This document shows, one piece after another, positions 7,000 to 58,118 of a stretch of 64,000 bases of DNA (positions are counted from its first letter, which is position 1; each line of letters starts with the position of its first letter). A program made the position numbers and the translations under genes. This DNA is from Octopus bimaculoides (taxonomy: Eukaryota). The stretch lies in assembly GCF_001194135.2 (NCBI RefSeq), contig NC_068990.1, positions 71,617,289-71,681,288 of the forward strand, in the 5' to 3' direction. Below the pieces are notes generated by a model. That model worked only from the letters and a program-made list of their open reading frames with translations, was not told the DNA's origin and searched no databases.

Positions 7000-9259
7000 T
7001 ATAACACAGCCTGTATGTAACAGGGAGACAACAGTGGATTAGAAAATATTTCACTCTGACTGTCTGACTGTTTGAAGTTTTCAAGTCATTTTACAAAACC
7101 AAGCCCCAACACATTTACCTATCTGTGCATGTATTTGTGCGCGCGCGCACACACATACATTTAATGCACTTACATAAGGAAATAGCAGAATCTTTTTAAA
7201 TAATTGGATACTTCAAAAGAAAAAGATGAAAACGAAACAAATTAATTGCTAACGATAAATTATTAGAATATCTGATTAGTTTTAAAAGTTAAAAAAAAAA
7301 AAAAAAAAAAAAAACCTTAAGCATTACTGTAAAACTGATTTAGGAAAAAAAATCTATTTTAATGTGTGTGACCTATTTGTTACTAAGCAACCAAATCTTG
7401 ACCTGCTAAGACACGCAGCAACAGTACGAGATGCGACGCTTTATTGTTGTCAGACTGCAAAAAAGTCTCAGTCCATGCTTTGTTCCGCCCACTATTATTT
7501 TCACTATTTATCTTTTGTGCCTGTCACGACCTATCTGTTTTTTTTTTGTTTTTTAACTATTAACTGATCTCGTAACCATGCCTGTATATAACTACTACTG
7601 TTAAAAGTTGGTGTCAAGGAGCCAACGTAGAAGCCTCTGCATGATCGCATGACCTGCTTAGCAATAGCAACCAAACCTACATACCCCTTCCCATTTAAGA
7701 AAGCCTTGGTTTATAGGTCCGCTCGATCAGGCCTGACTTTGGGTTAAAAATCAACAGCGTCTCTTCACGTAATTGGCTTAATGATAAAACACACACACAC
7801 ACATTGTCTGGATCTAACAGCGAGAATACGGAAAGACCCTGCCCGTCGTATAGTATAAATCAAACCCAGGTGAGGCTAATCCTCAGTCAGGTTTCTATTC
7901 CTTACAGGGTGGGTGGGGCCTCGCACCGAATCTAGAAATCGATCTTATATATTGACACAGCACAGCGTTGTAGAGCAAGACGAAAGTTCTACGTGACCCC
8001 GAGAAGCTCAGTTTCGATTCCTTAACAGGACTAATTTAGTTATCTCTACACGAATGCAGGCAACCAAATAAACCAATTCAACTAACGAAGGGGCGTTGCC
8101 GGGAAAGGTTTCATTACTCTAATTCCTTCCCTATCTGGGGGTGTTGTACAGGGAGTGTTCTCATTTGAAAATGGATTCTTATATTTGAAAGATTTTTGGA
8201 ATATATCTTAGCTACATCGAAGTGCTATTCAGTCCCACTACCCAAGACGGAAACTGAAAGAAGCCTTGTTCCCCTCTACAGCTCGATAACTGGTGTTGGT
8301 TTGTTTGCGTCCCTGTCACTATGCAGTTCGGCAAAAAAAAACAAAAAAACAAGAGGCCCATAGAATTAGTACCGGGTTTTTAAAAAAAATAAGTTCTGGG
8401 GTCCATTTTCGCTCGGCTAAACCCTTGAAGGCGGTACCCTAGCATGGCGACAATCTAATCACCAAAACAAGTTTAAAAAAAAGACACACTTATTGATATT
8501 GGAATTTATACATACATACAATATTGGTACCTGATTGATATAGTAAACCGAATTGGTTTNNNNNNNNNNNNNNNNNNNNNNNNNNNNNNNNNNNNNNNNN
8601 NNNNNNNNNNNNNNNNNNNNNNNNNNNNNNNNNNNNNNNNNNNNNNNNNNNNNNNNNNNNNNNNNNNNNNNNNNNNNNNNNNNNNNNNNNNNNNNNNNNN
8701 NNNNNNNNNNNNNNNNNNNNNNNNNNNNNNNNNNNNNNNNNNNNNNNNNNNNNNNNNNNNNNNNNNNNNNNNNNNNNNNNNNNNNNNNNNNNNNNNNNNN
8801 NNNNNNNNNNNNNNNNNNNNNNNNNNNNNNNNNNNNNNNNNNNNNNNNNNNNNNNNNNNNNNNNNNNNNNNNNNNNNNNNNNNNNNNNNNNNNNNNNNNN
8901 NNNNNNNNNNNNNNNNNNNNNNNNNNNNNNNNNNNNNNNNNNNNNNNNNNNNNNNNNNNNNNNNNNNNNNNNNNNNNNNNNNNNNNNNNNNNNNNNNNNN
9001 NNNNNNNNNNNNNNNNNNNNNNNNNNNNNNNNNNNNNNNNNNNNNNNNNNNNNNNNNNNNNNNNNNNNNNNNNNNNNNNNNNNNNNNNNNNNNNNNNNNN
9101 NNNNNNNNNNNNNNNNNNNNNNNNNTCTCTCTCTCTCTCTCTCTTTGAAGGATAATTAATAGAAAATCTAGAGATATCGGGAAATGCTTTCCTTAAATAT
9201 TAGACCTGTTAATTAGAGGTTGGAAAATTCTGTTTACTCAAAGAAAGATATTAAAAGGT

Positions 9260-11005: not shown

Positions 11006-11131
11006 CTATCTGGCCTGAATTTTGGTTGTGTGTGTGTGTAATGTTCGGTAATGTTTTTAATACCCATAATTTAAAATACAAATAATTTGTGCACGCGCGC
11101 GCGAAAATAGTAATCAGTTACTAAATTGTAC

Positions 11132-11184
<53 letters not shown>

Positions 11185-11275
11185 CACACACACATGTACA
11201 CACATAAACATACATTCGTACACACACACATATATTATGTAGTATTAATTGTGAGGTAGTTTTAGTAATTCTTAC

Positions 11276-11494
11276 CACATTACGAAGGTGGGCAAACTCG
11301 GCGTCGGAACCGTTCTTGGAAGGCGACCTGCCTACAACAAGGTTGATAAAGACACCATCAACAATGTAAATACAGTCTTGATCGCCACTGCCGTATTTTT
11401 CTCTCAAAGCATCTGTAAAAGATTTCTTGTAAACATTGTTTTTCTCTGATTCCAAAGAAGCGATCTGACGTGATATTTCAACACAAGTTTCCAT
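11276..11494 (-). CDS. First coding exon of an unidentified gene divergent from Clc (METCVEISRQIASLESEKNNVYKKSFTDALREKYGSGDQDCIYIVDGVFINLVVGRSPSKNGSDAEFAHLRNV)
   Basis: 73 open codons of non-repetitive, protein-like composition. ATG context aagATGg and donor GTG|gtaaga (phase 0). The other two frames are closed. I do not recognise the family. Confidence 0.6.
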
Positions 11495-11930
11495 CTTTAG
11501 TGCATCGCTTGTTTTTGTAAACAATTCAGAGAGTTGAAGCAATAGCTAACCCAGGAGTTGTTATGAAATATTTACAAGTCACCTCACGTTTAGCGTGTGC
11601 TATATTTAGACTTTGTTTTGATGGAGTGTCTTGATGCACTAATACCTAACTTCATGCTAAATTTCAGTTTTTGGTGCCATAGTCAATGATATAATAATGA
11701 ACATTTCACTGCTATTATTATTTTTTTATGGTAAATCTCTTAAATATAATAGTGTGTAATTTTCAATCAATAAAATTCTATATTTTGGATGTTTCTATGG
11801 ACGCATTCGAAAAATGTGTTAAGTGCATCATGATGTTAGATAATAAGACCAATCAGAACACTTTGCCGAAAACCGACGGTAGATTACGGAAACAGCCGAT
11901 TGTTTGTCTGACGTATTTCATTCTAACAAA
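11495..11930. promoter_or_regulatory. Putative bidirectional promoter and 5' UTR interval between the divergent ORF and Clc
   Basis: Head-to-head ATGs 437 bp apart in repeat-free, CpG-retaining sequence. TSS positions cannot be read from sequence alone. Confidence 0.5.
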
Positions 11931-12078
11931 ATGGCTGATTTCGAGAATTTCGAGTCTGCTGGTGATGGAAATGTCGAAGAAGACCCTGCTGCTGACTTTT
12001 TAGCTCGTGAACAGACAGAACTCGCAGGTCTTGAAGACGACAACTTTCCCGTTGCAGATGCCTCTCAGCCAACTGCAG
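11931..12078 (+). CDS. Clc: Clathrin light chain, coding exon 1 (MADFENFESAGDGNVEEDPAADFLAREQTELAGLEDDNFPVADASQPTA-G)
   Basis: ATG in context aacaaaATGG. Contains the conserved CLC N-terminal motif EEDPAADFLAREQ-x-x-LAGLEDD. Ends at donor CAG|gtacgt, phase 1. Confidence 0.97.
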
Positions 12079-12585: not shown

Positions 12586-12621
<36 letters not shown>

Positions 12622-13287
12622 NNNNNNNNNNNNNNNNNNNNNNNNNNNNNNNNNNNNNNNNNNNNNNNNNNNNNNNNNNNNNNNNNNNNNNNNNNNNNNN
12701 NNNNNNNNNNNNNNNNNNNNNNNNNNNNNNNNNNNNNNNNNNNNNNNNNNNNNNNNNNNNNNNNNNNNNNNNNNNNNNNNNNATTAGTTATAATTTTTTC
12801 CCCCGGAAATTCCCTCTTCAGAGAACGATGTATTTATTCCTGATTAACATAACTCTTTCCATCGATTTTTACCAACTTTGCTAATATGAGTTAGCTTTCT
12901 TTAATTTTACTTCCTCGTTCAATGATGTGTGCCGCCTCGTCACTTCCTGATGTGTGCTTGTGTATAAAGCTAATTTACAACTAGATAAAATACAAAAAAG
13001 AAAAAAGATCATGCGAGCACAATCATCTCCACCATTATCTTCAAGAGCAAGGAAGTCGAGTTAAAAAAAAGATGCGAGTTGTTAAAGCTGAAGCTGGTTC
13101 AAATGATACAAAATTACCCTTTCTCTTTTAAGTGTGGCACGTTCCTACAATTTTGGTAGGTAATTAATTAGATAACAATTTTTTTTTTCTCGTCGAATTT
13201 CTCCTTATCAGACTTCTGATGGGACCTGTACATTAGTCTCTAACTCCTTGAACTTTTTACTGACCACACACACATGTATATATATAG

Positions 13288-13338
13288 GTCTTGAAGATGA
13301 CAACCCCCCCGTTGAAGATGTTACTCTTCCAACCACAG
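13288..13338 (+). other. Candidate duplicated 51-nt exon (G-LEDDNPPVEDVTLPTT-G) inside a diverged copy of the exon 1/intron 1 junction
   Basis: 39/51 identical to 12028-12078 with no indels. Retains donor CAG|gtacgt and is preceded by TACTGAC and tatatag. Phase 1-1. The polypyrimidine tract is poor. Confidence 0.45.
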
Positions 13339-13781: not shown

Positions 13782-14645
13782 CGAGGTGTGATCAACAAGT
13801 ATCCGGACTGTTGCCATAGTAACGAAGCTAAAGCATGCTGAGTGAAGCCACTTAACACAGATTGACCTTGAAGTCTGCTGTGCATGCGCACTAAGTTTTA
13901 ACATTCTAGCTCACTTCTGTTTACAGCTGTGCTCGGAAGGAAGTTGTGTATCATGTGATCGTCGCAGTGACCATGACAGAGAAAGTTGTCATGGCGATAC
14001 TTGCTCAGAAGCCTAGAAAAAGCTGCAGAAAGCCTATGAGTTGCGCACAAGTGGTTCAGACGTCTCCAAGATGGCTGAAAAAATGTTGCTAGTGATGAAC
14101 GTTCTGGGAGACCTGCAACCAGCAGAACTGAGAAAAACGTTGTATATATGTGTGCAGCTGTGAGGGGAAATTGCCGAATCACCATACATGAGTTATTAGA
14201 GGATGTGCAGATTAGTTAGGGTTCAGTCACTGTCACTGAATATTTGGGTATGAGATGCATGTCTGCCAAGTTTGTGCCAAAACTACTTTCAGTTGACCAA
14301 AAAGATACTTGGGGTTTTAGTTGCACAAGATCTCCTTGATTGTGTTGAGAATGACGAAAACCTTTTGGAAACTTTGCATACGCCTCTGAGCAGGTATCAC
14401 CAAGCTTTTGGCAAAATTTGATGCAGATTCTCTCCTCAACTTTCTCTGTCATAGTCAATGCAATGATCACATGCTACACACCTTCCTTCCAAGCACTGCT
14501 GTAAACAGCAGAAATGAGCTAGAGCTTTAAAATTTAGTGTGCATGCAAACAGAATCCAAGGTCCATCTGTGCATAGCAGCTTTACTCTGTGTGCTTTAGT
14601 TTTGTTACTATGGCAACAGTCCAGATGCATATTGATCAGACCACG
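13782..14645. mobile_element. Non-autonomous mariner derivative built from two left ends (long ~208-bp inverted arms)
   Basis: TA at 13780-81 and 14646-47. Ends CGAGGTGTGATCAA and TTGATCAGACCACG share CTGTTGCCATAGTAAC. A decayed transposase HTH lies on + (DERSGRP, ITIHEL, SAKFVPKLL) and a second N-terminus on - (MTEKVEERICIKFCQKLG). Confidence 0.88.
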
Positions 14646-14769
14646 TATCCTGATATAATATCTGCACAGATAACTACATGTTTTTTTTTTTCATGCCTGC
14701 TTCACTATACTGGCATAAGTTGGAGAGACCACCTCTAGCTCCGTGTTTTGTCATCTGTTGTGGTCTTTT

Positions 14770-18634: not shown

Positions 18635-18705
18635 CTGATGGGTTTAACACCTTTGAAGAATCAAATGCAACAGTTAATGGTTTGAGTGATGCAGATGTGC
18701 CACAG
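18635..18705 (+). CDS. Clc: Clathrin light chain, coding exon 2 (ADGFNTFEESNATVNGLSDADVPQ)
   Basis: Acceptor ttctattgtag and donor CAG|gtatgc. 71 nt, converting phase 1 to phase 0 exactly as exons 1 and 3 require. Low-conservation acidic linker. Confidence 0.85.
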
Positions 18706-20198: not shown

Positions 20199-20319
20199 AC
20201 TAATGGACCTACAGATGGAAGTGGTTATGCTGCTATAGCTCAAGTTGATAAACACCATCGAGAACCTGAGAAAATCAAGTTGTGGAGAGAAGAACAAAAG
20301 AAACGGCTTGAACACAAGG
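20199..20319 (+). CDS. Clc: Clathrin light chain, coding exon 3 (TNGPTDGSGYAAIAQVDKHHREPEKIKLWREEQKKRLEHK)
   Basis: Acceptor cttgcttgcag and donor AAGG|gttagg. Matches the CLC NGPTD..YAAI.QVD...EPE.I..WREEQ..RLE motif. 121 nt, phase 0 to 1. Confidence 0.96.
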
Positions 20320-21653: not shown

Positions 21654-22804
21654 TATATATCTTAGGCTTTAGACAATACTGTGTCCTGTGTTGTGAGAGG
21701 TGACTAAAAGAGTTGGTGGCAGGAGTATCCTCTTATCACGAATCACTTGCCTTAGGAAACCTGTCCAACCATCAAAAGATGAATATAAAATAAGGATGTT
21801 GCCTTCTAAAGTACATTGTTACTTTGTTACTTGAACGTAAACCCTGTAAAGTGAGTACTTTTTGTTTAGAGCACTTCAAACAAAATGTTGGAAGTAATCT
21901 GAAAAAAAATAAATAAACAAGGCTTTGGTCAGCCTGAGGCTATAATAGAAGACGCTTGCCCAAAGTGTCATTCAGTGGGACTGATCCTGGAACCATGTGG
22001 TTGGGAAGCAAGCTTCTTACCACACAAGCACTCTTGCACTTATCTGTATAAAACAAAATTAAGTTAAAATTAAAAAAAAAAAGCTTAGGTATAATGTCAG
22101 AAAAACAAGATTGATTAGTTATTGATGAAATGATTTTTGATCAGATTTAACCTGTGGTTCAACAAAGCATCCATGTAGCTGGATCTTCCATCATCAATGC
22201 ACAACGAAATGTAACTCATTGATGCGTTATGTCCATCCGCTGTTGAAGGAAAGAGACTAGGTTGTCATGTTTGCATCAAAGGATTTTGAGAATTCTTTAT
22301 AAAAACAGTGCATATATAGCATTAGGTATATAAGTTGCATGTGGTTGATTCCTATGCTCATAATTGTAAGGTAGAGTAGACATTGGATTGTATGTATTAT
22401 ACAGAAGGAAGATTGAAAGCAATGCAAGCAAACCGTGATGTACGACCAAAGTTTCAGAACATGGATCACAGAGCGATCCATAACTACATGCCACAGTGCC
22501 TCTGTCTGATGCAAAACTTCCAATTCAAGAAACTTCCATGTCAAATCACCAGCATTCAAACAACCATGCCCAATCATCTCATTCTGTGCTGGAGAAGAGG
22601 TAGGTAGATGTGTGCTGTGTTCAAGAAGATGAGAAGAGCTTCCACCAGGATATATAGGATAACATCATCATCCCGAAATATAACAATAAATAAAAACAAT
22701 TTCATGTTAAACTGTTCAATACTTTCTGTCTGCTACATATTTATTATTTTGTCTGATGAAATGCTAGCAAAACTTCAGTCAGTTAACACTATTCTTGAAA
22801 AAGA

Positions 22805-22837
<33 letters not shown>

Positions 22838-22977
22838 ATATTGTTATTATTTTAAACAGTTTGATTTGGTTCCATGTGACTTAGTTTTACTGACTTCTAA
22901 CAGAAACCTGTCTCATTCAGGCTTAGATTACTGAACATATATATTTTATATTACATTTTATGCTTTTACGATTGTAG

Positions 22978-23089
22978 ATGCTGAAGAAGAAAATAAGAAG
23001 GAAATATGGCGTGAAGCTGCAAAGAAAGAGCTTGAAGATTGGTTGAAAAATCAGGCAGAACAGCTTATTAAGACCAAAGAAAACAACCG
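22978..23089 (+). CDS. Clc: Clathrin light chain, coding exon 4 (DAEEENKKEIWREAAKKELEDWLKNQAEQLIKTKENNR)
   Basis: Acceptor gattgtag and donor CCG|gtaata. Heavy-chain-binding helix with W..AKKELEDW...Q.EQL.K.K.NNR. 112 nt, phase 1 to 2. Confidence 0.97.
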
Positions 23090-25380
23090 GTAATACTACT
23101 GTTTTAGTTATAAATCTTCATCTATCAATAAATGTTTTTCTCTTTCACTTAAATCAGGTATACAGTTATTGAGATTTTAGTGTTCTTGTCTGATACAAAA
23201 AGAATACTCTCAACATTTTATTTACTAAGCACTTGCCTACCGTTGCATTGATTGATATACATATTATTGTAGTGTTTAACTTGTCTGCTTTAGTAAGAAT
23301 TAAATCTTTCAGAAAGATCTGTAGATCTTTGGAGGCCAAATAAGTAAAATTTATATTATAATCAAATTTGAATTTTGATTGGCATTTTGTTCCTTGCTTA
23401 TATTTTTGTGTAATTCCTTTAAAAAAGATTAAAATCTTAAATTAGTAAAACTATTATAATCTGAAACACTGGTATGGAATGACCTAGAAATGTAAGTAGT
23501 AACATTGGTGATTGAATGAAAATACAGTGAAGTTAAAAAAAAAAAAAGACCTGGAATCAAAATTCTCATTCCTGCTTGGACATATTTATTCTGATGTCCT
23601 CCTGACAACAGTCTGTTCCACTTGTAGAAGCTGTAATACCGTCAATATTCTTGAATGAAAACATAGAATGGCTTCTCTAAAATTTTAACTTGGATATGTA
23701 AAATAATTGTATCTAGTGTTGTGTATTAGAACAAGGGCCAAATGTAAGAGTAATTTAATGCATTGTTGAAGCTTCTTTTTATATAGAGCCTGTTGTTTGA
23801 TGATGGGCATTCTTAAAGATGTTAAATACTTCTCTTCCTTACAGCACACTAACATTTTACTATTTTATTGAACTCATGCCAGTACAAACTTTACTAGTCT
23901 CTCTAGCCAATGAGGAAATATCTTCAGGAACGTTTGATCTACTTGAAATTGCAGCCAAATCTCCCTCAAATCATAGTCTTTATCACTTATTTAGGAGGGA
24001 AGGGCAGTACACATGACCCCTTTATAGGACCTCTGAGACTATTGAAGGGGAAGGACAGTATCCAAGGACCAGTTGGCAGTGTTAAACCAGATGACGGATT
24101 AAGTCTGCCACCCCAAACAGTAAATTTTTAAAATTGTGGCAGATTTAGTGACATTCTTTAGACTTCAACTTTATAACAGGTTTAGACATTTGAATAATTA
24201 TCACCATGAAGGAAAAACTACAGAAATAAAATTCTTGTTTGCCAATGATATATATATCTATTAATTTTCTAAGTTGTATTTATTTCCACTCAACACTGAA
24301 AGTAATATTCATTGTGCATGAAATCTTTTGTGAACAAAGTCAGTAATTTATTGTTCTTTGAAATCTTGTATTATTGTTCTATGCTATGTTTGCTCTTGTC
24401 CCCTATATTTTATTGACATTGTTCCCATCTGTATGGCACTTCCCTACCACGTGTATGGCACTACTGTTCCAACTTTGCGCTAGTGTTATCTTTCAGTATA
24501 TAAATATGCACTTTTATCTTGTTGATGCTGTATAATTAATGCTTTCTTATTTAAGTGCTGTAATATTTGCTTCTTGGTAAGAAAAAGAAAAAAAGTCTTG
24601 TTAGTAATTAAGGACAATAGCCAATAACATATTTAGCATTTAAGGAGTTCAACTGGTAAGTTCTGCTGTGTTAACTCCTAATCTTTAATAGTTTAAATTT
24701 TTATCAACCCCAATCACGTCTGTTCATTCTGTTACTCAATTTGTTTGTTCTTGAAATTATATTCAAATATAGGATATATCTGGCAGTTGTGAAACTACTT
24801 CAACAGAAATTATACAGAATTATAATATACATATAGAATAGAATTAAAGAATTAAAATGTTTTGTTTTAAAAAAGCTTGTTGCACTATGTAAAAAGTTAC
24901 AATTTTGTTTGAAATTGTAATTTTAATAATTGAATTATTATTATAATAAAAACAAAATAATACTTTATTTGGCAGCTGTGCATTGTTAACCAGCTAGAGG
25001 AGATTCCTCTTGAGGTTAAAACATTGCAGTAAAGTCCATTTGAATGGAACAGCCATATTGAAGTGGCTATGAACATTAATTTTATATTATCTTTAGGTTT
25101 CACCTTTTTCCTTTTTAGATTTTTTTTTTTTTTTTTTTTAGAGATGACAGGTGATGCAATTTCATCCTGCTTTCAAGCCTCTTATTATCGTGACTTAAAT
25201 TGTCTCCCTCCATCATGAAACACTATGAACTTTGTGAACATTGTAGATCAGTAATTCCTCACCAAGCTATTTCCCCCTATGCTCCGGTAACATCTCTTTG
25301 AATATAAACATGTCAAACTGATTTCTTTATACGTCGTCTTTGGTGCACTTGTAAGTGTGTATCTCATTGTTCTTCCACAG

Positions 25381-25419
25381 AGCTGCTGCCGCAGCCGAGC
25401 TTGCAGACATCACTTGTGG
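25381..25419 (+). CDS. Clc: Putative alternative 39-nt cassette exon of clathrin light chain (R-AAAAAELADITC-G)
   Basis: Acceptor tctcattgttcttccacag and donor TGG|gtaaga. Symmetric phase 2-2 and open in frame. Local GC/CpG retention within a CpG-poor intron. Confidence 0.75.
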
Positions 25420-25596
25420 GTAAGACTAAAACTGTAGCGACGCACTCTAAGTAGACTTTAGACATTTGCTGTTGTTGTCATTGTTGTTGTCAGTTCGTCT
25501 GTAATCTTTATTTATCTTTAGTTCCACTGTAGAAATTTATTTTATTTTTAAAGGGATCATTTTATTTCTTTAGCATGACCATCATTCTGATTATAG

Positions 25597-25627
<31 letters not shown>

Positions 25628-26633
25628 TTTTAATCACATCTTATTAGAAACCTCTTAATTCCTCCTACAGTCTGTACAACCACCTCAAATACACTGACTG
25701 TAGTGTTATAGCATTTGTCTGTTATTTATTTGCCAGATATCTGATTTTTGTATGACTTACTATCAGCAGCCAACTTAGTCAGTCTCAAAGGTCTTTTATT
25801 CAGAAAATGTATTTTGTTATCCTGTAGCAATATTTTATCATCGTGTAACGTTTGTCTACCATGCTGGTATGAGTTTGATGGTGCCACAGGATCTAACAAG
25901 CCAGAGGATTGTGTGTTGAGCTCCCATGTCTATTTTAGCATGGTTTCTATAGCTGGATTCCCTTTCTAATACCAATCATCTTGAGTACTTTTATGTGGTA
26001 CCGGCACTACTGAGTTCAACTTGCAAGTCAAAGAAAAAGATCTCCCAAATGAGTGGAGGTGTAGTAGAGAGGGAGGTGGCTTTATGTCAAGTTTTGAGCT
26101 GCTTAAAGCATGACAGACAGTCACGGTTGTCTTGCTACAGAGGAGATACAAGGCTACTTTGCATCACATAATAGTGGGTGGGTGTAACTGGAAAGAGATA
26201 AAGATGGTGGTGCTAAGGTACCAGAGCATACTCTCAAGGTACAAAAAGGTGAGTATGAAAGAATATGGGAAGAGAGTAGGAAAGGGTGGATTGATAAGTT
26301 TGTAAGAGTGTGAGAAGAGAGTGACAGCTGGTTAGGGTTGAGTATTGTAAATGATGTGTGGAGAAATAGTCAATGGTAAATACCTGTTTGAATTCCTACA
26401 AGGATCCCTAGAGGTAGATAGTTGTAACATATTTGCTCTAAGTGACTGTGGAAGTGCCTTTATGACCAGCTGCTTCTCAAAAAATCTGTATTCTCCTCCC
26501 CAACTGAAACCAGCTTGTTAAAGATAGTAAAAATTAATGTTAATTTACTATGTTTTGGAAAATAGAATCAAGGTTGAGCATCCAGATAAAGTTAACCATA
26601 TGTAGAATAATGATAATAAAAGTTATATATGTA

Positions 26634-26683
<50 letters not shown>

Positions 26684-29600
26684 TATAGACTAATTTTAAC
26701 TATTGTTAATTATCATTATCTGTTATATAATATCACGCATTTGGGTTGTTTTTTAAAAAATTTTTGGAAATTACAGGATGCTTTCATTTGCTCGACCACT
26801 GTCTGATAATTATAAAAATAATTTATAGATATGGTAGATCTTGGGAAACACAGTCGTGAAAGTGACATTAAAGTAATTATCATTAATACCCTTGCAATAA
26901 ATGATTTGAACTGTTGGTAAATATTCACAAGTGTCAGGGGTGTTTAAAATTCATATAAATTTTTGAATATAAAGGTAATTTTAATATTCATGTTGTCTGG
27001 TTAACTAGGTTGCTTCCCAATTAGGTGGTCTTGGTTTCAGTCCCACTGCACTGCATCTTGGGCAAGTGTCTTCTACTAGAGTCTTGGGTTGACAAAAGGC
27101 TTGTGAGTGGATTTAATAGGTGGAAACAGAATGAAGCCTGTTGTGTGTGTGTGTCTGTGTTCACACCCCACTGCCACTTGACTGTCAGTGTTGGTTTGTT
27201 TACATCCCGGCAAAAGAGGTCAATAGAATAAGTTCCAGGCTTTAAAAAAATAAGTGCTGAGGCTGATTTGTTTAATGAAGCCTTTCAAGGTAGTGCCCCA
27301 GCATAGCCGTAGTCCAATGCCTGAAGACAGGCAAAAAATAAAAGCTTAAAAATTACCTATATTTGTTCCCTCCAAAAGTTTTAAAGATTAACTGCTTAAT
27401 CTTGTCATAGACATCTGAATTTTCTGGCTCGAAACTACTATAACAAAATAAATGGAAAATGGTAAAAGTTAGTTGTATTCCTTCAACTGTCAAATTTCAG
27501 AATAAGTTATTTGTCAGTTGAATAAAGAACAGCGTTGGAACATAGCATTATATTTTATATCTGGTTTTTATCTGAAAGGTTTCCTTTTAGTTTTTTGGTA
27601 ACATTTCATCTAGTTAAATTTTTGTCTTTAATAAAATTGCCTTTTGTTTGATAACAGGCACAGTTTTCCTCTGTGATGGAATGTGTTTGTTTGAACGATA
27701 TACTGTCCAAATGAAAAGTTCTTGACCCTGTACAGCATATTGTAGCAAAATTCAATGTGAGCAGAATTAAATTTAAATGCGTGAAACATTATTGAAATGA
27801 TATGAGAGTATATATAATGAATTCTATTTTAGGCGCAAGGCCAACCATTTTGAGGGGAGGGATGGGTCGAAACCTCTGACCTACCTCACTTTCCAGTATT
27901 TAATTAGTACCTTGTTTTATTGGTCCCAAAGAGATAAAAGGAAGAGTCTCATCATTATATATATATATATATATATATATATAATGAAAAGTTTTCTGTA
28001 ATTTGGTGCAGTTAAATGATTGATGGTGTTCATTCATTTTGTAAAACACTTGCAAATGATGGACTAAAGTAATAGACAGATAGGAGGAGGGAGTCATACT
28101 CTATGGTGGAAAGCTAGAAATGAGGTTTAGCTAACAAGTAAAATGCAGGAGTATTTACCAGCTGCAGGACTCTGTGATAATTGCTAATATATTGCATGCA
28201 GCGTGAGACATTTGAGCGATACTAGATATCCACTTAATGGAGATTGCCAGAAAATATTTCACAAGAGCAATATAATATCTCCATTGTCATCTTTTATCAA
28301 AGTAAAAATATTTTATAGGGAAGAACCTACAGGAGTCTGTTTTTGAAGATAATGAGTTTTTAGTGTTAAGCTAGTATTGGATATAATTGGATTGCATAGA
28401 ATTTAACCCATGTTGGATACAATTACTCGTAAAGTATCCTACATTTTGTAGGATTCTTGTATGGGTGGAAGAGGAATATTTAGATTAGATATGAGGATAT
28501 GATTTTACTGATCTCCATCATTAGGTCCCAGTAATTTTATTGATCTTGAAAGAATGAAACATTAAGTAGATTCCAGTGGTATTTGAACTCGGTGTAAAGA
28601 GATGTAACCAAATACCATAAATGATCAACTCCACTGAATCTGCCATCCTCTTCATGATTGGTTGTGAACTCAGTGGAAACTTCTGGTTACAGACCAATGC
28701 CTGTTAAAATTCTGTTCTTAGCTGTTTGATTGATTGACAGATGACCTTTGATGTGGTTGAACAACCAATCCCAACCAGTTGAGATTCACGGTATAAGTTG
28801 TACTAATCATCCTTTTGATCACTGAATGCAAAATGTAACTCACATGACCTCCATTCAGATTTCCCTGTGTCACTAATTCACCCTTGTATGCAATCCATCC
28901 TGCTGAGAGGACTGGAGCAATGTGAAATGAAGTGGTTTGCTCAAAAACACAATGCACAGTCAATATGGGAATTGAAATATTGACCTTACATTCATGAATG
29001 CAACATTCTAACCACTAGGCCATGCACCTCAGCTATTGCTTCTAAACTAATGTCCATTGTATAAGATTTATGTTCTTTTCAGAAGTTGAAGAATAAGTTT
29101 GAGATGTGGAAGTGTTCCATCTGAAGGTGATCATTGCCATAACAAAAATTTGACTTATACATGTAAAGGGCTATACTGATAAGGGGTTGTTCTGCAATTG
29201 CTGGGTAAGAAAAATGTTTTAGGTAACTGTAATGATGTTTTCATAGACAGACAGTTTTGTGTGGTGAAGTGTTTAGTAGAAAATATGAAGTATTTGTTCT
29301 TACTGATGAGATGGTGCAAATGCTTTATTGCAGATTCGTGTTTGTGCTAGCCTAATGATAATAATATAACATCAGTTTATATTAGTAGACTTAAGTTGAA
29401 TAATGTTTTGCTATATCTTTATTTCTTGACTTGACTTCCAATTTTTAAATTCTTTTTAATGAGAAATTCAAAAACTGCTGTTCCTTTTTCCTCCTCCTCC
29501 TCCTCCTCCTCCTCCCCCCCTTTTTTTTTTAACTAGACTTCCTGCTAACATTTCATTTTTTTTTTCTTCTTGATCAGAAAATTTCTTCATAGATGGTCTT

Positions 29601-29781
29601 ATAAAGTACTTTGATGTTTACTCTTAGCAATTATCATTGAAGGTAGTACTTTTATATATCTGTTTATATAGAATTTAATGCCTTAACATATCCAAGGCTG
29701 CAACAGGTGTGCAATTACCACAGGTACTTTATTCTTACTCACAATTTTCCCTATCCCTTTCTTTACCCGTTTCCTCTACAG

Positions 29782-29808
29782 GCATGCAGAGGCTTTGGAG
29801 AAAAAAAA
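29782..29808 (+). CDS. Clc: Putative alternative 27-nt microexon of clathrin light chain (HAEALEKK-K)
   Basis: Branch-like tactcac, a ~35-nt polypyrimidine tract ending ttcctctacag, and consensus donor AAA|gtaagt. Symmetric phase 2-2 and open in frame. Confidence 0.72.
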
Positions 29809-31548
29809 GTAAGTATTCAGTGTAGGTAATTTTGCAGTTTTATCATGCAGTATATACATATGCTGCAACTCTTTAGGGATAAATTTTTTTCTCATCTCTA
29901 TATTCTAATAAATTAATAATAAAAAAAAAATATTTTGAATTAGCCATAAAATTCTGTAATTTAAACATTTACTGCCACTATGGATTAGCTTTCTTTTCTG
30001 GATTGATTATTTTCTGTAGATGCTTTTAGTGTAAATACTGTTTAATATAGCTTTGCTTTTTAAGTCTCAGGAAAACAGTTATCCCAACTGTATGGGTTAT
30101 AAGTATCTCTTGATTTTGGTCATAAAATTTCCTATAAAGCCTAATACTGGACTTAATTGTTGTGATGGTTGTTGTTCAATTTAGCTTTTTCCCTTTGCTT
30201 TTCTTTAATAAAAAAAAATCAGTTTCCAACATTTGCATNNNNNNNNNNNNNNNNNNNNNNNNNNNNNNNNNNNNNNNNNNNNNNNNNNNNNNNNNNNNNN
30301 NNNNNNNNNNNNNNNNNNNNNNNNNNNNNNNNNNNNNNNNNNNNNNNNNNTTAATGTTTGGGTTTTTTTCAACAATTATTTTCATTGAATTATTTTAAAT
30401 TTTAAAAGATTTTCATTTATCAAAATGTTTGACTTTACATTTGTACCAGTTTTAAAGTAATTATTAAATGTGTAAATCTTATGACAATATATAATCAAAA
30501 TGTAATTCTTTCTCTCTGGGTTGATTCCAAATGACAGAGCAGAAAGGCATCTCCAAAGTGAGACTATATCACTGTCTACTATGAACATATATACACCATG
30601 CTTGAGTGAATGTTGAATATTTAATACACATGACTACCTTTAGTAGAAATTTTGTTGTAGTGGGACACACCTACATATTTCAGATAAACTTATTAACCTA
30701 CACTAAGTCAACATTGATATCTTACATGAAACATCATCATTTACTGTTTGTTGATAGTTGTCACTGCCTATCCATATGAAATATCACAAACCTCTGCTGG
30801 CTTCTGTCCTCAGTTGCTGTCGTTATTGCTATCAAATCTTCTCGTATTATGTATCTTGGTCAAGGTTTACCCTGATTTCTTCCACTTATACAGTATTTGT
30901 CTTGGCAACTGAGTTACCTCCATTCTTTGGACCTACCTAAAATTATAGAGGTCTCATTGCACCAATATCTCTCTTCCTTATAAGGAATTTGGTTTTCTTT
31001 AGGATGAGCCTTTTCATGTGATGTTCATATTTTTGTGTTGGGCGTCTCATCATGAATGCATGCTGTTTATTTTATCTTTGTAGTATATTGTCCATGCCTA
31101 TGATCTGTAGAATAAGGTGGATAATACTACTGCTATGTGTACTTCACATTTAACTTGGACTGATACATACTTGTAGTTCTTCTCTCTTTCTCAGTCCCCT
31201 GAATTCTGAGCTAACTTTGTTCAACCCGCAATCTAGTTTGACATTGAGTCTATCAGCATTTCTCATAATACTACCGAGAGAGGTAAAATATCTTGCCTCC
31301 ACCAGCTCTGACCTTTTAATAATGTTGGAATCTGGTTGTGCTTCTTGGTTAAAGTTGGAATTTAATTAATAAAAAACTTCAATATTCTGGATGTTAATTT
31401 TCAAGCTGACCTCTGTGGTTGCACCGTCAAAAACCCCCATATTCTGCTTATTCTTTCACACTATGGACGACAAAACATGATCATCAAACATTTTTCTTAC
31501 TAATATGTGTGTTACTGATATGTAGAGCTTTGAGATCTAACACCTTAA

Positions 31549-34051: not shown

Positions 34052-34223
34052 GGCACAAGAAGAAGCAAGCATGAAGGACCGTGAAGAGAGCATTGCTGGT
34101 CAAGAATGGGAGAAAATCTGTCGGCTTTGTGACTTCAACCCTAAGCATTCCAAAAACACAAAAGACGTGTCTCGTATGAGATCAATATTGCTACAGTTGA
34201 AGCAAACGCCTCTGGTTCGCTGA
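34052..34223 (+). CDS. Clc: Clathrin light chain, terminal coding exon (AQEEASMKDREESIAGQEWEKICRLCDFNPKHSKNTKDVSRMRSILLQLKQTPLVR*)
   Basis: Acceptor ctttcccttatgtag, phase 2. Conserved CLC C-terminus EWE.I..LCDFNPK.SK..KDVSRMRS.L..LKQ.PL.R. TGA at 34221-34223. Confidence 0.98.
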
Positions 34224-51021: not shown

Positions 51022-54000
51022 CTGCAATACAATCAGTGTTTCACTAATTAACATTTAAGAAATAATTTAGTATTTCTTTCTTACACTTGTACATAACAAA
51101 TATACCAATATGATGAGAAAAAAAGAAAAAAAAATGAAATTCATATATTATTTTTCCCTGCTGGTATGAAAACAATTAAGATTTAATGTATTCAATTATT
51201 AAGGCTGAAAATTTTTCAGATAAACTCATTGAGATGATATCTCTTATGAAATACACTTCAGCTATGTGTTTCAAGTAATTTTGAAAATAATTGAGAATTT
51301 GTAAAGATTTAGTAAAACTGTCTTTTCTTTATTATTGAGCTGATGTTTGTAAAATTACCTTAACAAAAGCAATTTCAATAAAATTACAATGGAAACATTT
51401 TTATTTAAATGTGAACAATTTAAAACAAAACCTTTTGTTTCATTGACTCAAGGGTGATCTCAAAATGGTTAAATGAAAATATAAAGAGAATACAACACTC
51501 CAGAAATCTCTATAGAAATTTTACTTTATTTAAAGCTGGCAGTAATTTTAAAGAAAGAGCCCGAATCAGCTTTTATTATTTATACTGATTTGTTAATCAG
51601 CAGTTTTTGCATTTAGTTCATTGCTCATTTATCTTTTATTTAAAGACCATTGATTGAAATGTTTAAGAAAATTTTATAAAATGTGAGAAAACAANNNNNN
51701 NNNNNNNNNNNNNNNNNNNNNNNNNNNNNNNNNNNNNNNNNNNNNNNNNNNNNNNNNNNNNNNNNNNNNNNNNNNNNNNNNNNNNNNNNNNNNNNNNNNN
51801 NNNNNNNNNNNNNNNNNNNNNNNNNNNNNNNNNNNNNNNNNNNNNNNNNNNNNNNNNNNNNNNNNNNNNNNNNNNNNNNNNNNNNNNNNNNGTGTATACT
51901 CTTTTACTCTTTTACTTAGTTTCAGTCATTCGACTCTGGCCATGCTGGGGCACCATTTTGAAGGGCGTAGAGGAACAAACCAAGCCCAGTTCTTATTTTT
52001 GAAGTCTGGTACATTTTCTATTAGTCTGTTTTGTGGACCTGCTAAGTTATGGGGGTGTAAACAAACCAATACTGGCTGTCAAGCAGCGGAGGAGGGGGGG
52101 ACATGAAGACACACACACATACACACGTGTGTGCAACAGGCTTCTGCATATTTTTCATCAACAAAAGTTCCTCATAAGGCATTAGTTGGCCTGGGGCTAT
52201 ATTAGAAGACACTTCTCCCAAGGTATCACATAGTAGGACTGAACACAAAACCATGTGATAGCCATGTTCACAACATATATACACACACATACATACATAA
52301 ACAAAATAGTTCATACATATGTACAAGATTTATCCTCCATCACACACGTCCACAAGCGCACAGGTACATACCTATATAGACAGACCCATGCACATGCACA
52401 CACATATACACACACAGAATCAGATTTAAATAATTATAATAATGCTTTATATTCATCAAGTGTCACAAATATTAAAGAATATTTAGAGTTACTTTCCCAA
52501 ACGGATGTATAATCACAGAAGTTAACTAATGTTTCTGCACAAGAAAGACACACGACTGACTGCCTCAGTCTATGAGGCTAGAACCAGGATCCACTTCTTA
52601 ACAGTAAAAGAGGTTTGCAGTAGAAGGAACATCCAAAAGTAACAAACAACTAGCACTCCATTGGTTATGATGATGAGAGTTCCAATTGATCTGATCAACA
52701 GAGCAGTCTGCTTGTAAAATTAATGAGCAAGTGGCTGAGCACTCCACAGACACGTGTACCCTTAATGTAGTTCTTAATGAGAGAGAGAGAGAGAGAGCTA
52801 ACATAGAGTCACTCCATTTACTAAAAACAGCAGCTAAATTTATTTCATATCATAAATGGATCTCCAACAGTTTTGATGATGAGCACTCAGTTATTTGAGC
52901 ACCTGAACTTCCTGCTCAGTGAATTACCTTTTAGGTAGCTTAGTATTCTCCAAAAGTGTGTACCATTAATGTAATTTTCAAACAGAACCAGCATGAGACA
53001 AGGCTGGACTTTTGAATCACTGGTACAATCTACCTGACAGGCTTCTGCACAGCTTTCATTTATGCACACAGCTTACAGGTCAAGGTGAGGAACCTATGGT
53101 AAATGACACAAGCAAAAATGCCATGCAGTGACATCAGACTAATGACTTCATGATTGAGAAGTGAACTTTTTAACTAGCCATGCCAGGTCCATACTTTATC
53201 ATCTTACAAAACAATATGTTGGATAGTGTAGTCCTAGATATTCTATATCTGAAAAGACAGGTTGGTCATAATTGGCATACCTTTTATCATAGGAGTGATC
53301 TTGCAGCTGAACAAAACAACAGGAGTGTAGAAATATATTGGACAGTGAAGAAAACATAACATGTCAACCACAGAAGACTGCAGTTCAGTGAATGTCAGAA
53401 TGTACATCAACTAAGAGCTGACATAATATATTTGGATCTATGGATTGAAGATCATCCTATTGTATTTTCCAGTATCTAACTCAAAGTGTATAGTGTAAAC
53501 ATGTAGTATAAACATTCAAACATCTTTGCAAATCCAGCTGCATTTTACATGGAACTTTTGGTCCTCCAAAGTCATCTTGGTGTGTAAGCCAACCTATCTT
53601 TTTTTTTTTTTTTTTTTTTTTTTGTAAATTTTGGTCTGAACAATTCGAGTTGTATGCAACATAATATGATAGTTATTTGATTGGATATCTATGTGGCATA
53701 GATCTCCTTGATCAGAGGTTACACAACTAGTAACATCAACAAAAGAATATCTATGCAGTCCTCAGCCTAAAAGAAATAATCAGAATAACCAATCTTAAGA
53801 AAAGAATATTTGTCAGTATAGTCTTGGCTACCACACTATCTGAGGAGAGGACTGGATGGTCAGGGCTGAAACATCTTTGATCAAAGATCAGCTCAATCAG
53901 AGCTGAATTGGTGCTAAATAACAACACAAAAACATCAGTAACATCAACAAAGATAACTTTACTACAACACCTATGACAACAATAATAACAATGAGGCATG

Positions 54001-54957: not shown

Positions 54958-55200
54958 GAATGGTGTGTGTATGGTGTGTATTTATGTGCATGACACATCA
55001 GGTAAGTATATATTGGACAGTGAAAATGTGTGTTTATGAGGATGTATGAGTGTGTATATGTGTGAATGTAAGTGTGTGTGTGTGCATACATGCATGTGCA
55101 TGTGTGTCTGTTGCCAAAAACCTGGAATGAGCAAATCCAAAGAGCCAGTTTTTACATTCGGTAATGAAACATTAATATTTAAATAAAATACGATGGTAAC

Positions 55201-55353
55201 CTTTAGTAGGCTCACAGCATGATGATTGGTCCGGTACCAAGCTTTTTCTAATTGCAGCACTTCAGAACGACTTTCCAAACTAAGATAAATACTACTACCA
55301 CTTCCAGTCTGGATGATAAAGCAATGTTGGCGGTCATCAGTTAACTCTGTGTC
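55201..55353 (-). CDS. SNTG1: Gamma-syntrophin-like exon (DTELTDDRQHCFIIQTGSGSSIYLSLESRSEVLQLEKAWYRTNHHAVSLLK)
   Basis: Acceptor attttttcatag and a weak donor AAG|gttacc, whose position is fixed by the phase-0 start of the next exon. Corresponds to DSDLLDRRKQCFTVQSESGEDLYFSVE. Confidence 0.9.
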
Positions 55354-55529
55354 CTATGAAAAAATAGGAGAGAAATATAGGATTAGAGCAATGTCTGTTT
55401 TTTTTTTTTAGTGATGTCTCCTATAGCAAACTTACAGCAACACTTTGAAGTTACAAAAATACCCCTTCACCTATAGTCATTTATATATACTTAAGGTGAT
55501 GTCCATAAACATACAGACAATCTGTATGT

Positions 55530-55700
55530 TTATGGAAGGTGTTCTTCCATCAAGGCAAGTCTCGGCCACATACAGTGAAGATGACATTCCAAAGGCTGGA
55601 GCAGTTTGAATGAGAAATGATGCCCCATCCACCATATTCACTGGACATTGTCCCATCTGATAATCATTTATTCCACAGTCTGCATATTGTGATGAACTAC
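55530..55700 (+). mobile_element. Mariner transposase catalytic-domain remnant
   Basis: HQGKSRPHT...F..LEQFE*EMMPHPPYSLDIVPSDNHLFHSL resembles HDNARPH...L.HPPYSPDLAPSDYHLF. Confidence 0.85.
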
Positions 55701-56244: not shown

Positions 56245-56316
56245 CTTGAGAATCTTGAACATTGATTCATAAACCTTTGACACACGTTCACATTGATTCC
56301 AGTCTCGCAGATCAGC
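56245..56316 (-). CDS. SNTG1: Gamma-syntrophin-like exon (ADLRDWNQCERVSKVYESMFKILK)
   Basis: Acceptor ttttctttcag and donor AAG|gtcagt. 72 nt. Corresponds to SNTG DW..AE..F.VYE.MCKILK. Confidence 0.92.
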
Positions 56317-57526: not shown

Positions 57527-57559
57527 TTAAAGTGATGATGTTTAGCTTCACAAAAGTAA

Positions 57560-58045: not shown

Positions 58046-58086
58046 GATCTGGGAAGGAAGGAAAGAAAGAAGGAATGAAGAAAAGT

Positions 58087-58118
<32 letters not shown>

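What the first reader, a model, noticed from the sequence alone, without database searches (positions are those of the whole stretch)
29740..29814. 27-nt microexon with a textbook branch point, pyrimidine tract and GTAAGT donor
Seen: tactcac-aattttccctatccctttctttacccgtttcctctacag|GCATGCAGAGGCTTTGGAGAAAAAAAA|gtaagt, encoding HAEALEKK(K). At 27 nt it is within the strict microexon class. Established: bilaterian neural microexons are commonly activated by Srrm/eMIC proteins through UGC motifs near the 3' splice site. Here there is no UGC in the last 50 nt, so regulation may differ. The frame depends on the 8-A run being assembled correctly.
Basis: partly seen in the sequence, partly recalled or inferred. 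Interest (0 to 1): 0.75.

Follow-up and report, generated by a model that had tools for sequence, protein, structure and literature searches.

The report
Octopus clathrin light chain microexon
The 27-base stretch is a real, already annotated optional exon of the octopus clathrin light chain gene; it adds nine amino acids at the same spot where vertebrate brain-specific clathrin light chains carry their extra segments, so it is an ordinary exon with an interesting evolutionary parallel.

Summary
Window 29782-29808 (+) is a 27-nt exon with a pyrimidine-rich acceptor and a GTAAGT donor. The window is Octopus bimaculoides, and the host gene is clathrin light chain (Clc), CDS 11931-34223.

- **Already annotated.** RefSeq isoform X2 (XP_014774092.1) includes the exon and isoform X3 skips it.
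- **The 8-A run is sound.** It is identical in three independent Octopus assemblies. In Argonauta the run is interrupted, but the exon is still 27 nt.
- **Conserved in cuttlefish.** Cuttlefish have a 27-nt exon at the same place, and it appears in a spliced RNA-seq contig.
- **A second cassette.** A 39-nt exon (25381-25419) lies upstream in the same intron.
- **Same site as vertebrates.** The insertion site and intron phase match those of the vertebrate neuron-specific CLCa/CLCb inserts. The peptides show no detectable similarity.

Neural specificity and Srrm/eMIC dependence were not testable here. This is an annotated exon of a known kind, of moderate evolutionary interest.

The parts
29782..29808 (+). 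27-nt cassette microexon ('exon B') of clathrin light chain, phase 2-2. With the flanking exons it reads CG|G (Arg), CAT GCA GAG GCT TTG GAG AAA AAA, AA|G (Lys), which inserts HAEALEKKK.
   Evidence: Sequence. 100% tblastn match to isoform X2, P0001. The skipping isoform is P0004. Orthologous 27-nt exons in four other cephalopods.
29724..29781 (+). Acceptor region: a 56-nt AG exclusion zone, candidate branch points (CTTAC/CTCAC with A at -45/-41, TTTAC with A at -17), an 82% pyrimidine tract ending ...uuuccucuACAG, and no UGC.
   Evidence: The last ~26 nt are about 73% identical to cuttlefish, while the exon itself is only ~37% identical (my hand count on alignment A3).
29809..29816 (+). Consensus donor GTAAGTAT, the best 5' splice site in the gene. 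If it is not spliced, the frame reads AAg-TAA, so translation stops immediately.
   Evidence: GT[AG]AGTAT is conserved in all five species. O. sinensis isoform X6 (P0009) ends ...HAEALEKKK.
25381..25419 (+). Second cassette exon ('exon A'), 39 nt, phase 2-2, encoding AAAAAELADITCG. It lies in the same intron, upstream of the microexon.
   Evidence: Spliced Logan transcript L006 shows ...aaccg|AGCTGCTGCC...TGTGG|ggcacaag. Identity is 38/39 nt with Argonauta and 35/39 with cuttlefish, where it reads AAAAAELAEITCG.
22978..23089 (+). Constitutive exon 5 (DAEEENKK...KTKENN + CG of the Arg codon), the upstream splice partner. It is the end of the heavy-chain-binding helix.
34052..34223 (+). Coding part of the last exon (G + AQEEASMKDREESIAGQEWEKICRLCDFNPK...PLVR, stop TGA at 34221-34223), the downstream splice partner.
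11931..12078 (+). Exon 1 coding part (MADFENFES...EEDPAADFLAREQ...PTA+g). It carries the clathrin light chain consensus motif.
13288..13338 (+). Alternative 51-nt exon 2 (GLEDDNPPVEDVTLPTT). It is a tandem duplicate of the 3' end of exon 1 together with its donor.
   Evidence: Present in isoforms X1-X3 and absent in X4.
18635..18705 (+). Exon 3 (ADGFNTFEESNATVNGLSDADVPQ).
20199..20319 (+). Exon 4 (TNGPTDGSGYAAIAQVDKHHREPEKIKLWREEQKKRLEHK+g).

Best explanation
Window 29782-29808 is a genuine, evolutionarily conserved, alternatively spliced 27-nt cassette exon of the single-copy Octopus bimaculoides clathrin light chain gene.

**Shown.** The exon sits in the ~11-kb intron between exon 5 and the last exon, downstream of a second cassette exon of 39 nt. 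Both cassettes are in phase 2-2, so the four combinations (neither, A, B, A+B) all stay in frame. All four are annotated in Octopus species. Inclusion inserts nine residues (HAEALEKKK) between ...KTKENNR and AQEEA.... This is the junction between the long heavy-chain-binding helix and the C-terminal segment. It is the same residue position and intron phase at which vertebrate CLCa (18 + 12 residues) and CLCb (18 residues) carry their neuron-specific inserts.

**Inferred.** The insert is predicted to continue the helix. It would lengthen it by about 2.5 turns (roughly 13 A) and turn everything downstream by about 180 degrees. Across coleoid cephalopods the length, the phase, the first His and the splice signals are kept, but the peptide sequence is not. 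This suggests the insert works mainly as a length and register spacer. By analogy with vertebrate neuronal inserts, such a spacer would tune how the light chain's C-terminal region near the triskelion vertex influences lattice geometry.

A very short exon needs strong signals, and this one has the best donor and the most pyrimidine-rich acceptor in the gene. I think tissue-regulated inclusion, probably enriched in nervous tissue, is more likely than not (about 0.55). It was not tested here.

The confidence of 0.85 applies to the 'shown' part, that this is a real, conserved, alternative cassette exon at this site. The spacer mechanism is at about 0.5.
For: **Identity and annotation**
- All window exons match P0001 (XP_014774092.1, 'clathrin light chain B isoform X2 [Octopus bimaculoides]', Pfam PF01086) at 100%, including RHAEALEKKK at 29780-29809.
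- P0004 (isoform X3, 224 aa) is the same protein minus these nine residues.
- O. vulgaris and O. sinensis models carry B alone, A alone, A+B or neither.

**Conservation**
- The exon is identical, with the 8-A run, in the O. vulgaris and O. sinensis assemblies.
- Argonauta has GCATGCTGAGGCTTCCGATGAAAAGAA (27 nt, HAEASDEKK).
- Acanthosepion has ACATTCTTCCGAAATGGGATCTGATCA (27 nt, HSSEMGSDQ). It is annotated in P0131 and present in a spliced RNA-seq contig, L005 from SRR8281691.
- Against Argonauta, the only non-repeat matches inside the intron are the two cassette exons with their flanks.
- O. bimaculoides versus O. vulgaris is 92.8% identical across this part of the intron (the aligned block 22669-30238), yet the microexon lies in a 198-nt stretch with a single mismatch.

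**Position**
- HMMER aligns the insert opposite the 18-residue insert IADKAFYQQPDADIIGYV of the CLCb chains 6wcj_B and 6sct_D, between NNR and A(S/Q)EEA.
- Genomic ORF fragments from vertebrates, echinoderms and molluscs all read ...R|A.E.AF across the acceptor. This shows the same phase-2 intron in all of them.

**Structure**
- The AlphaFold2 model has one helix from residue 114 to 190. It runs through residues 169-177, where pLDDT is 91-94.

**Mechanistic analogy**
- Vertebrate neuronal inserts change cage size, lattice quality and membrane budding through the heavy-chain knee (PMC7519287).
Against: - No RNA-seq reads from O. bimaculoides were examined. Inclusion in this species rests on gene models (RefSeq in O. 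bimaculoides and O. sinensis, the deposited annotation in O. vulgaris), plus a direct transcript only for the cuttlefish orthologue.
- Tissue specificity is unknown.
- The peptide is poorly conserved. Octopus versus cuttlefish is ~37% at the nucleotide level within the exon, which is near random. The Argonauta gene models recovered here do not include the exon.
- The AlphaFold model has low overall confidence (mean pLDDT 66.8, pTM 0.29) and contains no heavy chain.
- No sequence similarity to the vertebrate inserts was found, so the functional analogy rests on position alone.
Confidence: 0.85

Rival explanations
1. It is a neural, Srrm234/eMIC-dependent microexon in the strict sense. It would be included only in neurons because the eMIC domain recruits early spliceosome components to its weakly definable acceptor. 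This is a more specific version of the best explanation.
For: - The acceptor matches most of the published eMIC-type code (PMC8797185). It has a long AG exclusion zone (56 nt, and 50-56 nt in the orthologues) and a long CU-rich tract ending in UCCUCU.
- The orthologues in Argonauta and cuttlefish have UGC at -5..-3.
- The exon sits at the site of the vertebrate neuron-specific inserts.
- Neural exons are reported to evolve recurrently in the same genes across bilaterians (bioRxiv 10.64898/2026.09.05.749416).
Against: - Octopus itself has no UGC within 71 nt upstream.
- The gene's own exons give a poor baseline for the AG exclusion zone: exon 5 has 49 nt and the last exon 75 nt.
- No tissue data or Srrm perturbation data are available here.
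- Vertebrate CLTA exon 6 is also included in heart and muscle (PMC8712872), so inserts at this site are not necessarily neuron-only.
Confidence: 0.3
2. It is splicing noise or a nearly neutral exonisation that annotation pipelines picked up from rare transcripts, with no function of its own.
For: - The peptide sequence is poorly conserved (HAEALEKKK, HAEASDEKK, HSSEMGSDQ).
- The sequence pattern alone is only about 4-fold above chance.
- The Argonauta models recovered here do not include the exon.
Against: - The exact 27-nt length, phase 2-2, the leading CAT codon and both splice sites are kept across octopods and cuttlefish. From memory, that split is roughly 250-300 My old.
- The flanks are more conserved than the surrounding intron.
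- The exon is annotated independently in O. bimaculoides, O. sinensis and O. vulgaris, and its cuttlefish orthologue in Acanthosepion pharaonis; the cuttlefish exon also appears in an assembled transcript.
Confidence: 0.07
3. Its main output is a truncated protein. The exon would act as a composite terminal exon whose unspliced donor gives AAG-TAA and a nearby poly(A) site, producing a 190-residue light chain that lacks the C-terminal domain (O. sinensis isoform X6).
For: - P0009 (XP_036361867.1) ends ...ITCGHAEALEKKK.
- AATAAA lies 99 nt after the exon in all three Octopus species.
Against: - A genomic run of 10-13 A follows at +113/+119, which is the classic source of oligo-dT internal-priming artefacts.
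- Neither the AATAAA nor the A-run is present in Argonauta, and cuttlefish has no A-run and no such signal before +237.
- An immediate stop after an unspliced donor is a generic property of phase-2 exons with GTAA/GTGA donors. Exon 5 and exon A show the same thing.
- Most models splice the exon on to the last exon.
Confidence: 0.05
4. The 8-A run is mis-assembled. The exon would then shift the frame and act as a poison exon that triggers nonsense-mediated decay.
For: Homopolymer runs are prone to error, and the window comes from an assembly with many gaps (3,433 N).
Against: - Three independent assemblies, including long-read ones, agree on 8 A.
- Argonauta has an interrupted run in an exon of the same 27-nt length.
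- All protein models read through in frame.
Confidence: 0.02

Closest known systems
Vertebrate neuron-specific inserts of clathrin light chains (CLTA exons 5 and 6, 18 + 12 residues; CLTB exon 5, 18 residues)
   Same: - Same protein family.
- Same insertion point, between ...NNR and A(A/S/Q)EEA....
- Same phase-2 intron.
- Short in-frame cassette exons.
- The two octopus cassettes give four isoforms, like CLCa.
- The location is near the C-terminal, vertex-binding part of the light chain.
   Different: - The exons are shorter (39 + 27 nt against 54 + 36 nt).
- There is no significant peptide similarity.
- The gene is single-copy, not an a/b pair.
- Neuron specificity and effects on the lattice are unproven in octopus.
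Srrm4/Srrm234 (eMIC)-dependent neural microexons of bilaterians
   Same: - Length of 27 nt or less, and in frame.
- Long AG exclusion zone and a long CU-rich polypyrimidine tract.
- Strong donor, as reported for mammalian microexons.
- UGC right at the acceptor in the Argonauta and cuttlefish orthologues.
   Different: - No UGC within 71 nt of the acceptor in the three Octopus species.
- Neural inclusion and dependence on eMIC were not tested.
- The peptide is far less conserved than is typical of deeply conserved neural microexons.
Short alternative inserts at the same site in other invertebrate clathrin light chains (gene models)
   Same: The same NNR|A.E.AF junction carries isoform-specific inserts in other groups:
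- heterobranch snails: K[CH]NDVTESQG
- Littorina: YSSSSLT
- bivalves: KHNM, RGNM, RDNM
- the nemertean Lineus: VNQAEFFKERE
- the brittle star Amphiura: LEKTSKHQYMT
   Different: The sequences and lengths differ, and pairwise similarity to the octopus insert is not significant. I cannot tell whether these are one ancient exon that diverged or repeated independent gains.

Membership tests
Clathrin light chain (Pfam PF01086) gene | The protein matches the Clathrin_lg_ch family over its full length. | tested here: met
   P0001 is 100% identical to the window's exons, carries PF01086, and matches PDB clathrin light chain B at E = 1.8e-45.
Clathrin light chain (Pfam PF01086) gene | N-terminal consensus motif EEDPAA.FLA.QE and C-terminal W-E-[KR]-[IV]-x-x-L-C-D-F-N-P-K. 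| tested here: met
   EEDPAADFLAREQ is in exon 1. EWEKICRLCDFNPK is in the last exon.
Cassette microexon (3-27 nt class) | Length of 27 nt or less, bounded by AG and GT, a multiple of 3, and open in the frame set by the flanking exons. | tested here: met
   27 nt, AG at 29780-81, GT at 29809-10. The flanking codons are CG|G and AA|G, and there is no stop.
Cassette microexon (3-27 nt class) | Both the inclusion and the skipping mRNA exist. | tested here: met
   Annotated isoforms with the exon (P0001, P0002, P0121-P0123, P0125) and without it (P0004, P0129, P0137). For the cuttlefish orthologue there are assembled transcripts with it (P0136/L005) and without it (P0132). Raw reads for O. bimaculoides itself were not examined.
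Neural Srrm/eMIC-dependent microexon | UGC motif close to the 3' splice site. | tested here: not met
   The nearest upstream UGC in the three Octopus species is at -72. Argonauta and Acanthosepion do have UGC at -5.
Neural Srrm/eMIC-dependent microexon | Long AG exclusion zone and a long CU-rich polypyrimidine tract. | tested here: inconclusive
   The AG exclusion zone is 56 nt and the pyrimidine content 82%, the highest in the gene. However, exon 5 (49 nt) and the last exon (75 nt) also have long zones, and there is no genome-wide background.
Neural Srrm/eMIC-dependent microexon | Neural-specific inclusion that depends on the eMIC domain. | not testable with these tools
   No read-level expression or perturbation data are available. 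The literature search found nothing on this exon.
Homologue of vertebrate CLC neuronal insert exons | Same insertion site and same intron phase. | tested here: met
   Alignment to 6wcj_B and 6sct_D. ...R|A.E.AF read-through fragments in many phyla.
Homologue of vertebrate CLC neuronal insert exons | Detectable sequence similarity of the insert. | tested here: not met
   Shuffle tests with BLOSUM62 gave p = 0.97 for exon B versus the bovine 18-residue insert and p = 0.18 for exon A versus the same insert.
Homologue of vertebrate CLC neuronal insert exons | Neuron-restricted expression. | not testable with these tools
   No tissue-resolved data.

The most novel reading that the evidence does not exclude
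The hinge of clathrin light chain (the phase-2 intron after ...NNR) is a hotspot for tissue-specific microexons across bilaterians. Coleoid cephalopods have kept, for roughly 270 My, a two-cassette system (39 + 27 nt, four isoforms) that parallels the vertebrate neuronal CLCa system (54 + 36 nt). If the octopus exons are enriched in neurons and change lattice mechanics, the two large-brained lineages would have arrived at the same way of tuning clathrin for synaptic vesicle recycling. This could be by convergence or from an ancestral exon that has since diverged beyond recognition.
Probability: 0.3. Interest if true: 0.6.

Novelty: new member of a known kind. Interest (0 to 1): 0.4.

Why it matters
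Reviews describe alternative splicing of clathrin light chains as a vertebrate feature linked to neurons (PMC8712872). Here the single invertebrate gene has two conserved cassette microexons at the same hinge, and gene models from snails, bivalves, a nemertean and a brittle star show other short inserts at that site.

This makes one question directly testable: did isoform tuning of the clathrin lattice for neurons predate vertebrates, or did it evolve repeatedly? A public tissue RNA-seq set for O. bimaculoides already exists.

In itself the exon is an ordinary, already annotated alternative exon.

Tried and rejected
1. **Origin by duplication.** I tested whether the microexon arose by tandem duplication of the start of the last exon, of exon A, or of the end of exon 5. 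Local DNA alignments score no better than shuffles (p = 0.49-0.76). Peptide comparisons give p = 0.75-0.81. Rejected.
2. **Homology between inserts of different phyla.** Only Octopus versus Argonauta is significant. All cross-phylum pairs give p above 0.14. No support either way.
3. **A-run mis-assembly.** Rejected.
4. **Second protein search.** I searched with the C-terminal 88 residues to find more transcript fragments carrying the exon. It returned mostly genomic ORF fragments of the last exon. These were useful only for showing the conserved intron phase.
5. **Contig look-ups.** Look-ups for non-longest isoforms failed. The longest isoforms worked.
6. **Literature.** I searched for this exon, for octopus or cephalopod microexons, and for invertebrate clathrin light chain splicing. 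Nothing specific was found. Wakeham 2005 and Stamm 1992 are not held, and the 2026 preprint has no supplements held.
7. **Rbfox motifs.** GCAUG occurs at exon positions 1-5 in Octopus and Argonauta, and twice about 112-116 nt downstream in Argonauta only. It is not conserved across the clade, so I draw no conclusion.
Full report
**1. The observation**

- The acceptor AG is at 29780-81.
- The exon GCATGCAGAGGCTTTGGAGAAAAAAAA occupies 29782-29808 (27 nt, with an 8-A run at 29801-29808).
- The donor GTAAGT is at 29809-14.
- The 40 nt before the AG are 82% pyrimidine.
- No UGC occurs within 71 nt upstream. The nearest are at -72, -83 and -103.

As a bare pattern this is only mildly unusual. I searched the 10,962-nt host intron for an in-frame cassette of 51 nt or less with a GTRAGT donor and at least 70% pyrimidine upstream. 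It occurs exactly once, where first-order Markov resamples give 0.23 on average, and 18% of resamples have at least one. The pattern alone does not prove an exon.

**2. What the locus is**

The window is an AT-rich animal genome with microsatellites and 3,433 N. A first tblastn used clathrin light chain sequences written from memory, as probes only. It picked out four + strand exons.

A database search with the assembled protein then returned 'clathrin light chain B isoform X2 [Octopus bimaculoides]' (P0001, XP_014774092.1, Pfam PF01086). Every exon of P0001 maps to the window at 100% identity, including RHAEALEKKK at 29780-29809.

The gene model in window coordinates:

| Exon | Coordinates | Note |
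|---|---|---|
| 1 | ATG 11931-12078 | |
| 2 | 13288-13338 | alternative, 51 nt |
| 3 | 18635-18705 | |
| 4 | 20199-20319 | |
| 5 | 22978-23089 | ends ...AAC CG, phase 2 |
| A | 25381-25419 | cassette, 39 nt, AAAAAELADITCG |
| B | 29782-29808 | the microexon |
| last | 34052 to stop at 34221-34223 | |

With exon B included the mRNA reads CG|G CAT GCA GAG GCT TTG GAG AAA AAA AA|G GCA, giving ...ENNR-HAEALEKKK-AQEEA....

**3. Evidence that it is used and alternative**

- RefSeq isoform X3 (P0004, 224 aa) equals X2 (233 aa) minus these nine residues.
- Across O. bimaculoides, O. sinensis and O. vulgaris, the annotated isoforms carry neither cassette, A alone, B alone, or both.
- A spliced RNA-seq contig from Logan (L006, SRR16213286) shows exon A joined directly to exon 5 and to the last exon.
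- For exon B, I found no assembled Octopus transcript in the collections.
- The cuttlefish orthologue of exon B is present in a spliced 1,056-nt RNA-seq contig (L005, SRR8281691). The contig reads ...aataatag|ACATTCTTCCGAAATGGGATCTGACCA|agctcagg....

**4. Conservation and the A-run**

I fetched the orthologous genes of Argonauta hians (L001), O. vulgaris (L002), O. sinensis (L003) and Acanthosepion pharaonis (L004).
- The exon and its 8-A run are identical in the three independently assembled Octopus genomes.
- Argonauta has GCATGCTGAGGCTTCCGATGAAAAGAA, which is 27 nt and reads HAEASDEKK. The A-run is interrupted but the length is the same, so the worry about the frame is settled.
- Cuttlefish has ACATTCTTCCGAAATGGGATCTGATCA, also 27 nt and in the same phase, reading HSSEMGSDQ. 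It has a cccCUGCAG acceptor and a GTGAGTAT donor.
- Against Argonauta, the only non-repeat matches inside the 11-kb intron are exon A with its flanks and exon B with its flanks (29754-29833, 78.8% identity).
- Between O. bimaculoides and O. vulgaris the aligned block that covers this part of the intron (22669-30238) is 92.8% identical. Exon B lies in a 198-nt stretch (29669-29866) with one mismatch. Exon A lies in the longest exact run, 204 nt.

Exon A is strongly constrained at the protein level. It is 35/39 nt identical in cuttlefish, with mostly synonymous changes. Exon B keeps its length, phase, leading His codon and splice signals, but not its peptide.

**5. Where the nine residues go**

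HMMER aligns the octopus protein to the CLCb chains 6wcj_B and 6sct_D. The octopus insert falls opposite the 18-residue insert IADKAFYQQPDADIIGYV, between NNR and ASEEAF. Reviews and primary work place the neuron-specific inserts of CLCa (18 + 12 residues, exons 5 and 6) and CLCb (18 residues, exon 5) at this point, near the C terminus and the triskelion vertex (PMC8712872; PMC7519287).

Genomic ORF fragments of the last exon from vertebrates, echinoderms, annelids and molluscs all read ...R|A.E.AF through the acceptor. This shows the same phase-2 intron in each.

Gene models from heterobranch snails, Littorina, bivalves, a nemertean and a brittle star carry other short inserts at this same junction. 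None resembles the octopus peptide significantly.

An AlphaFold2 model of isoform X2 puts residues 169-177 inside one continuous helix (114-190), with pLDDT of 91-94 there. The whole model is of low confidence (mean pLDDT 66.8, pTM 0.29). If the insert is helical, nine residues add about 13 A and turn the downstream segment by about 180 degrees. That geometry is my inference.

**6. How it probably works**

Shown:
- It is a conserved, in-frame cassette with the best donor (GTAAGT) and the most pyrimidine-rich acceptor in the gene. Very short exons need such signals to be recognised.

Inferred:
- It acts as a spacer at the hinge between the heavy-chain-binding helix and the C-terminal segment.
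- In vertebrates, inserts at this hinge change cage size, lattice order and budding through the knee of a neighbouring heavy chain (PMC7519287).

On regulation:
- The acceptor has a 50-56-nt AG exclusion zone and a long CU-rich tract in all species.
- Argonauta and cuttlefish have UGC at -5..-3.
- Octopus has ACAG instead of GCAG.
- These features fit the published eMIC-type code (PMC8797185), except for the UGC in Octopus.
- The simplest reading is that an ancestral UGC was lost in the Octopus lineage. Whether that changed regulation cannot be said.

**7. Rivals**

- **Splicing noise.** Unlikely, given the conservation of length, phase and splice sites.
- **Truncated protein from donor read-through.** O. 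sinensis X6 ends ...KKK. A genomic A10-13 run just after an AATAAA, found only in Octopus, makes internal priming the likelier explanation.
- **A-run mis-assembly.** Excluded (section 4).
- **Strict neural, eMIC-dependent reading.** Plausible but untested.

**8. Novelty**

The exon is already in RefSeq, so its existence is not new. I found no paper that discusses it, or that discusses clathrin light chain splicing outside vertebrates.

[quoted passage not shown] Its main text does not mention clathrin.

I file this as a new, uncharacterised member of a known kind: short cassette inserts at the clathrin light chain hinge. It is of moderate interest because of the parallel with the vertebrate neuronal isoforms.

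Noticed in passing
window 13288-13338 (+), compared with 12028-12078: A 51-nt alternative exon (GLEDDNPPVEDVTLPTT) is a tandem duplicate of the last ~51 nt of exon 1, together with its donor and the start of the intron. It is included in isoforms X1-X3 and skipped in X4. Some O. vulgaris models contain the unit twice (P0005, P0125, P0127), so the copy number of this acidic, proline-rich repeat varies between species.
   Followed up: partly
window 25381-25419 (+): A second cassette exon (39 nt, AAAAAELADITCG) lies in the same intron. It is much more strongly conserved than the microexon: 38/39 nt with Argonauta and 35/39 with cuttlefish, with mostly synonymous changes. It is not annotated in the cuttlefish models, although it is conserved in the cuttlefish genome (L004, ~51690-51728).
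   Followed up: yes
window 29907-29930 (+): AATAAA lies 99 nt after the microexon, followed by a genomic run of 10 A (13 A in O. vulgaris and O. sinensis). Both are absent in Argonauta; cuttlefish has no A-run and no such signal before +237. This may explain the truncated O. sinensis isoform X6, either as an internal-priming artefact or as a poly(A) site specific to the genus.
   Followed up: partly
window 29490-29530 (+): A (CCT)8-C8-T10 tract lies about 250-290 nt upstream of the microexon. On the pre-mRNA it is a 40-50-nt pure CU tract. It is present in the three Octopus species and absent in Argonauta and cuttlefish. It could be a binding platform for a PTB-like repressor, or only a microsatellite.
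   Followed up: partly
L001 ~14736-14745 (Argonauta), downstream of the orthologous microexon: Two overlapping GCAUG (Rbfox-type) motifs lie 112-116 nt downstream of the Argonauta microexon. There are none within 300 nt downstream in Octopus or cuttlefish.
   Followed up: no
window ~13900-14700 (-): Two similar ORF fragments (…ALTMTEKVEERICIKFCQKLGDTCSEAY…) lie inside intron 2 of the clathrin light chain gene. From memory they look like the N-terminal part of a mariner-type transposase. Window 14463-14648 also matches cuttlefish locus L004 at 72040-72226 (77.5% identity), outside the gene, which fits a repeat.
   Followed up: no
window ~55000-63450 (-) and ~11117-11545 (-): The neighbouring genes are on the minus strand. 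Downstream is a syntrophin-like gene, with PH-like exon ORFs in the window; the Argonauta neighbour carries PDZ and Syntrophin_4th domains. Upstream is a leucine-rich-repeat protein. The LRR gene lies upstream in Argonauta, O. vulgaris, O. sinensis and cuttlefish; the syntrophin-like gene downstream was seen only in the Argonauta locus.
   Followed up: partly
window 8560-9140, 12620-12790, 44650-45610, 49490-50240, 51700-51890 (approximate): There are several runs of N, 3,433 in total, flanked by TA/CA microsatellites. The window therefore comes from a gapped scaffold assembly. None of the gaps touches a coding exon of the clathrin light chain gene.
   Followed up: no
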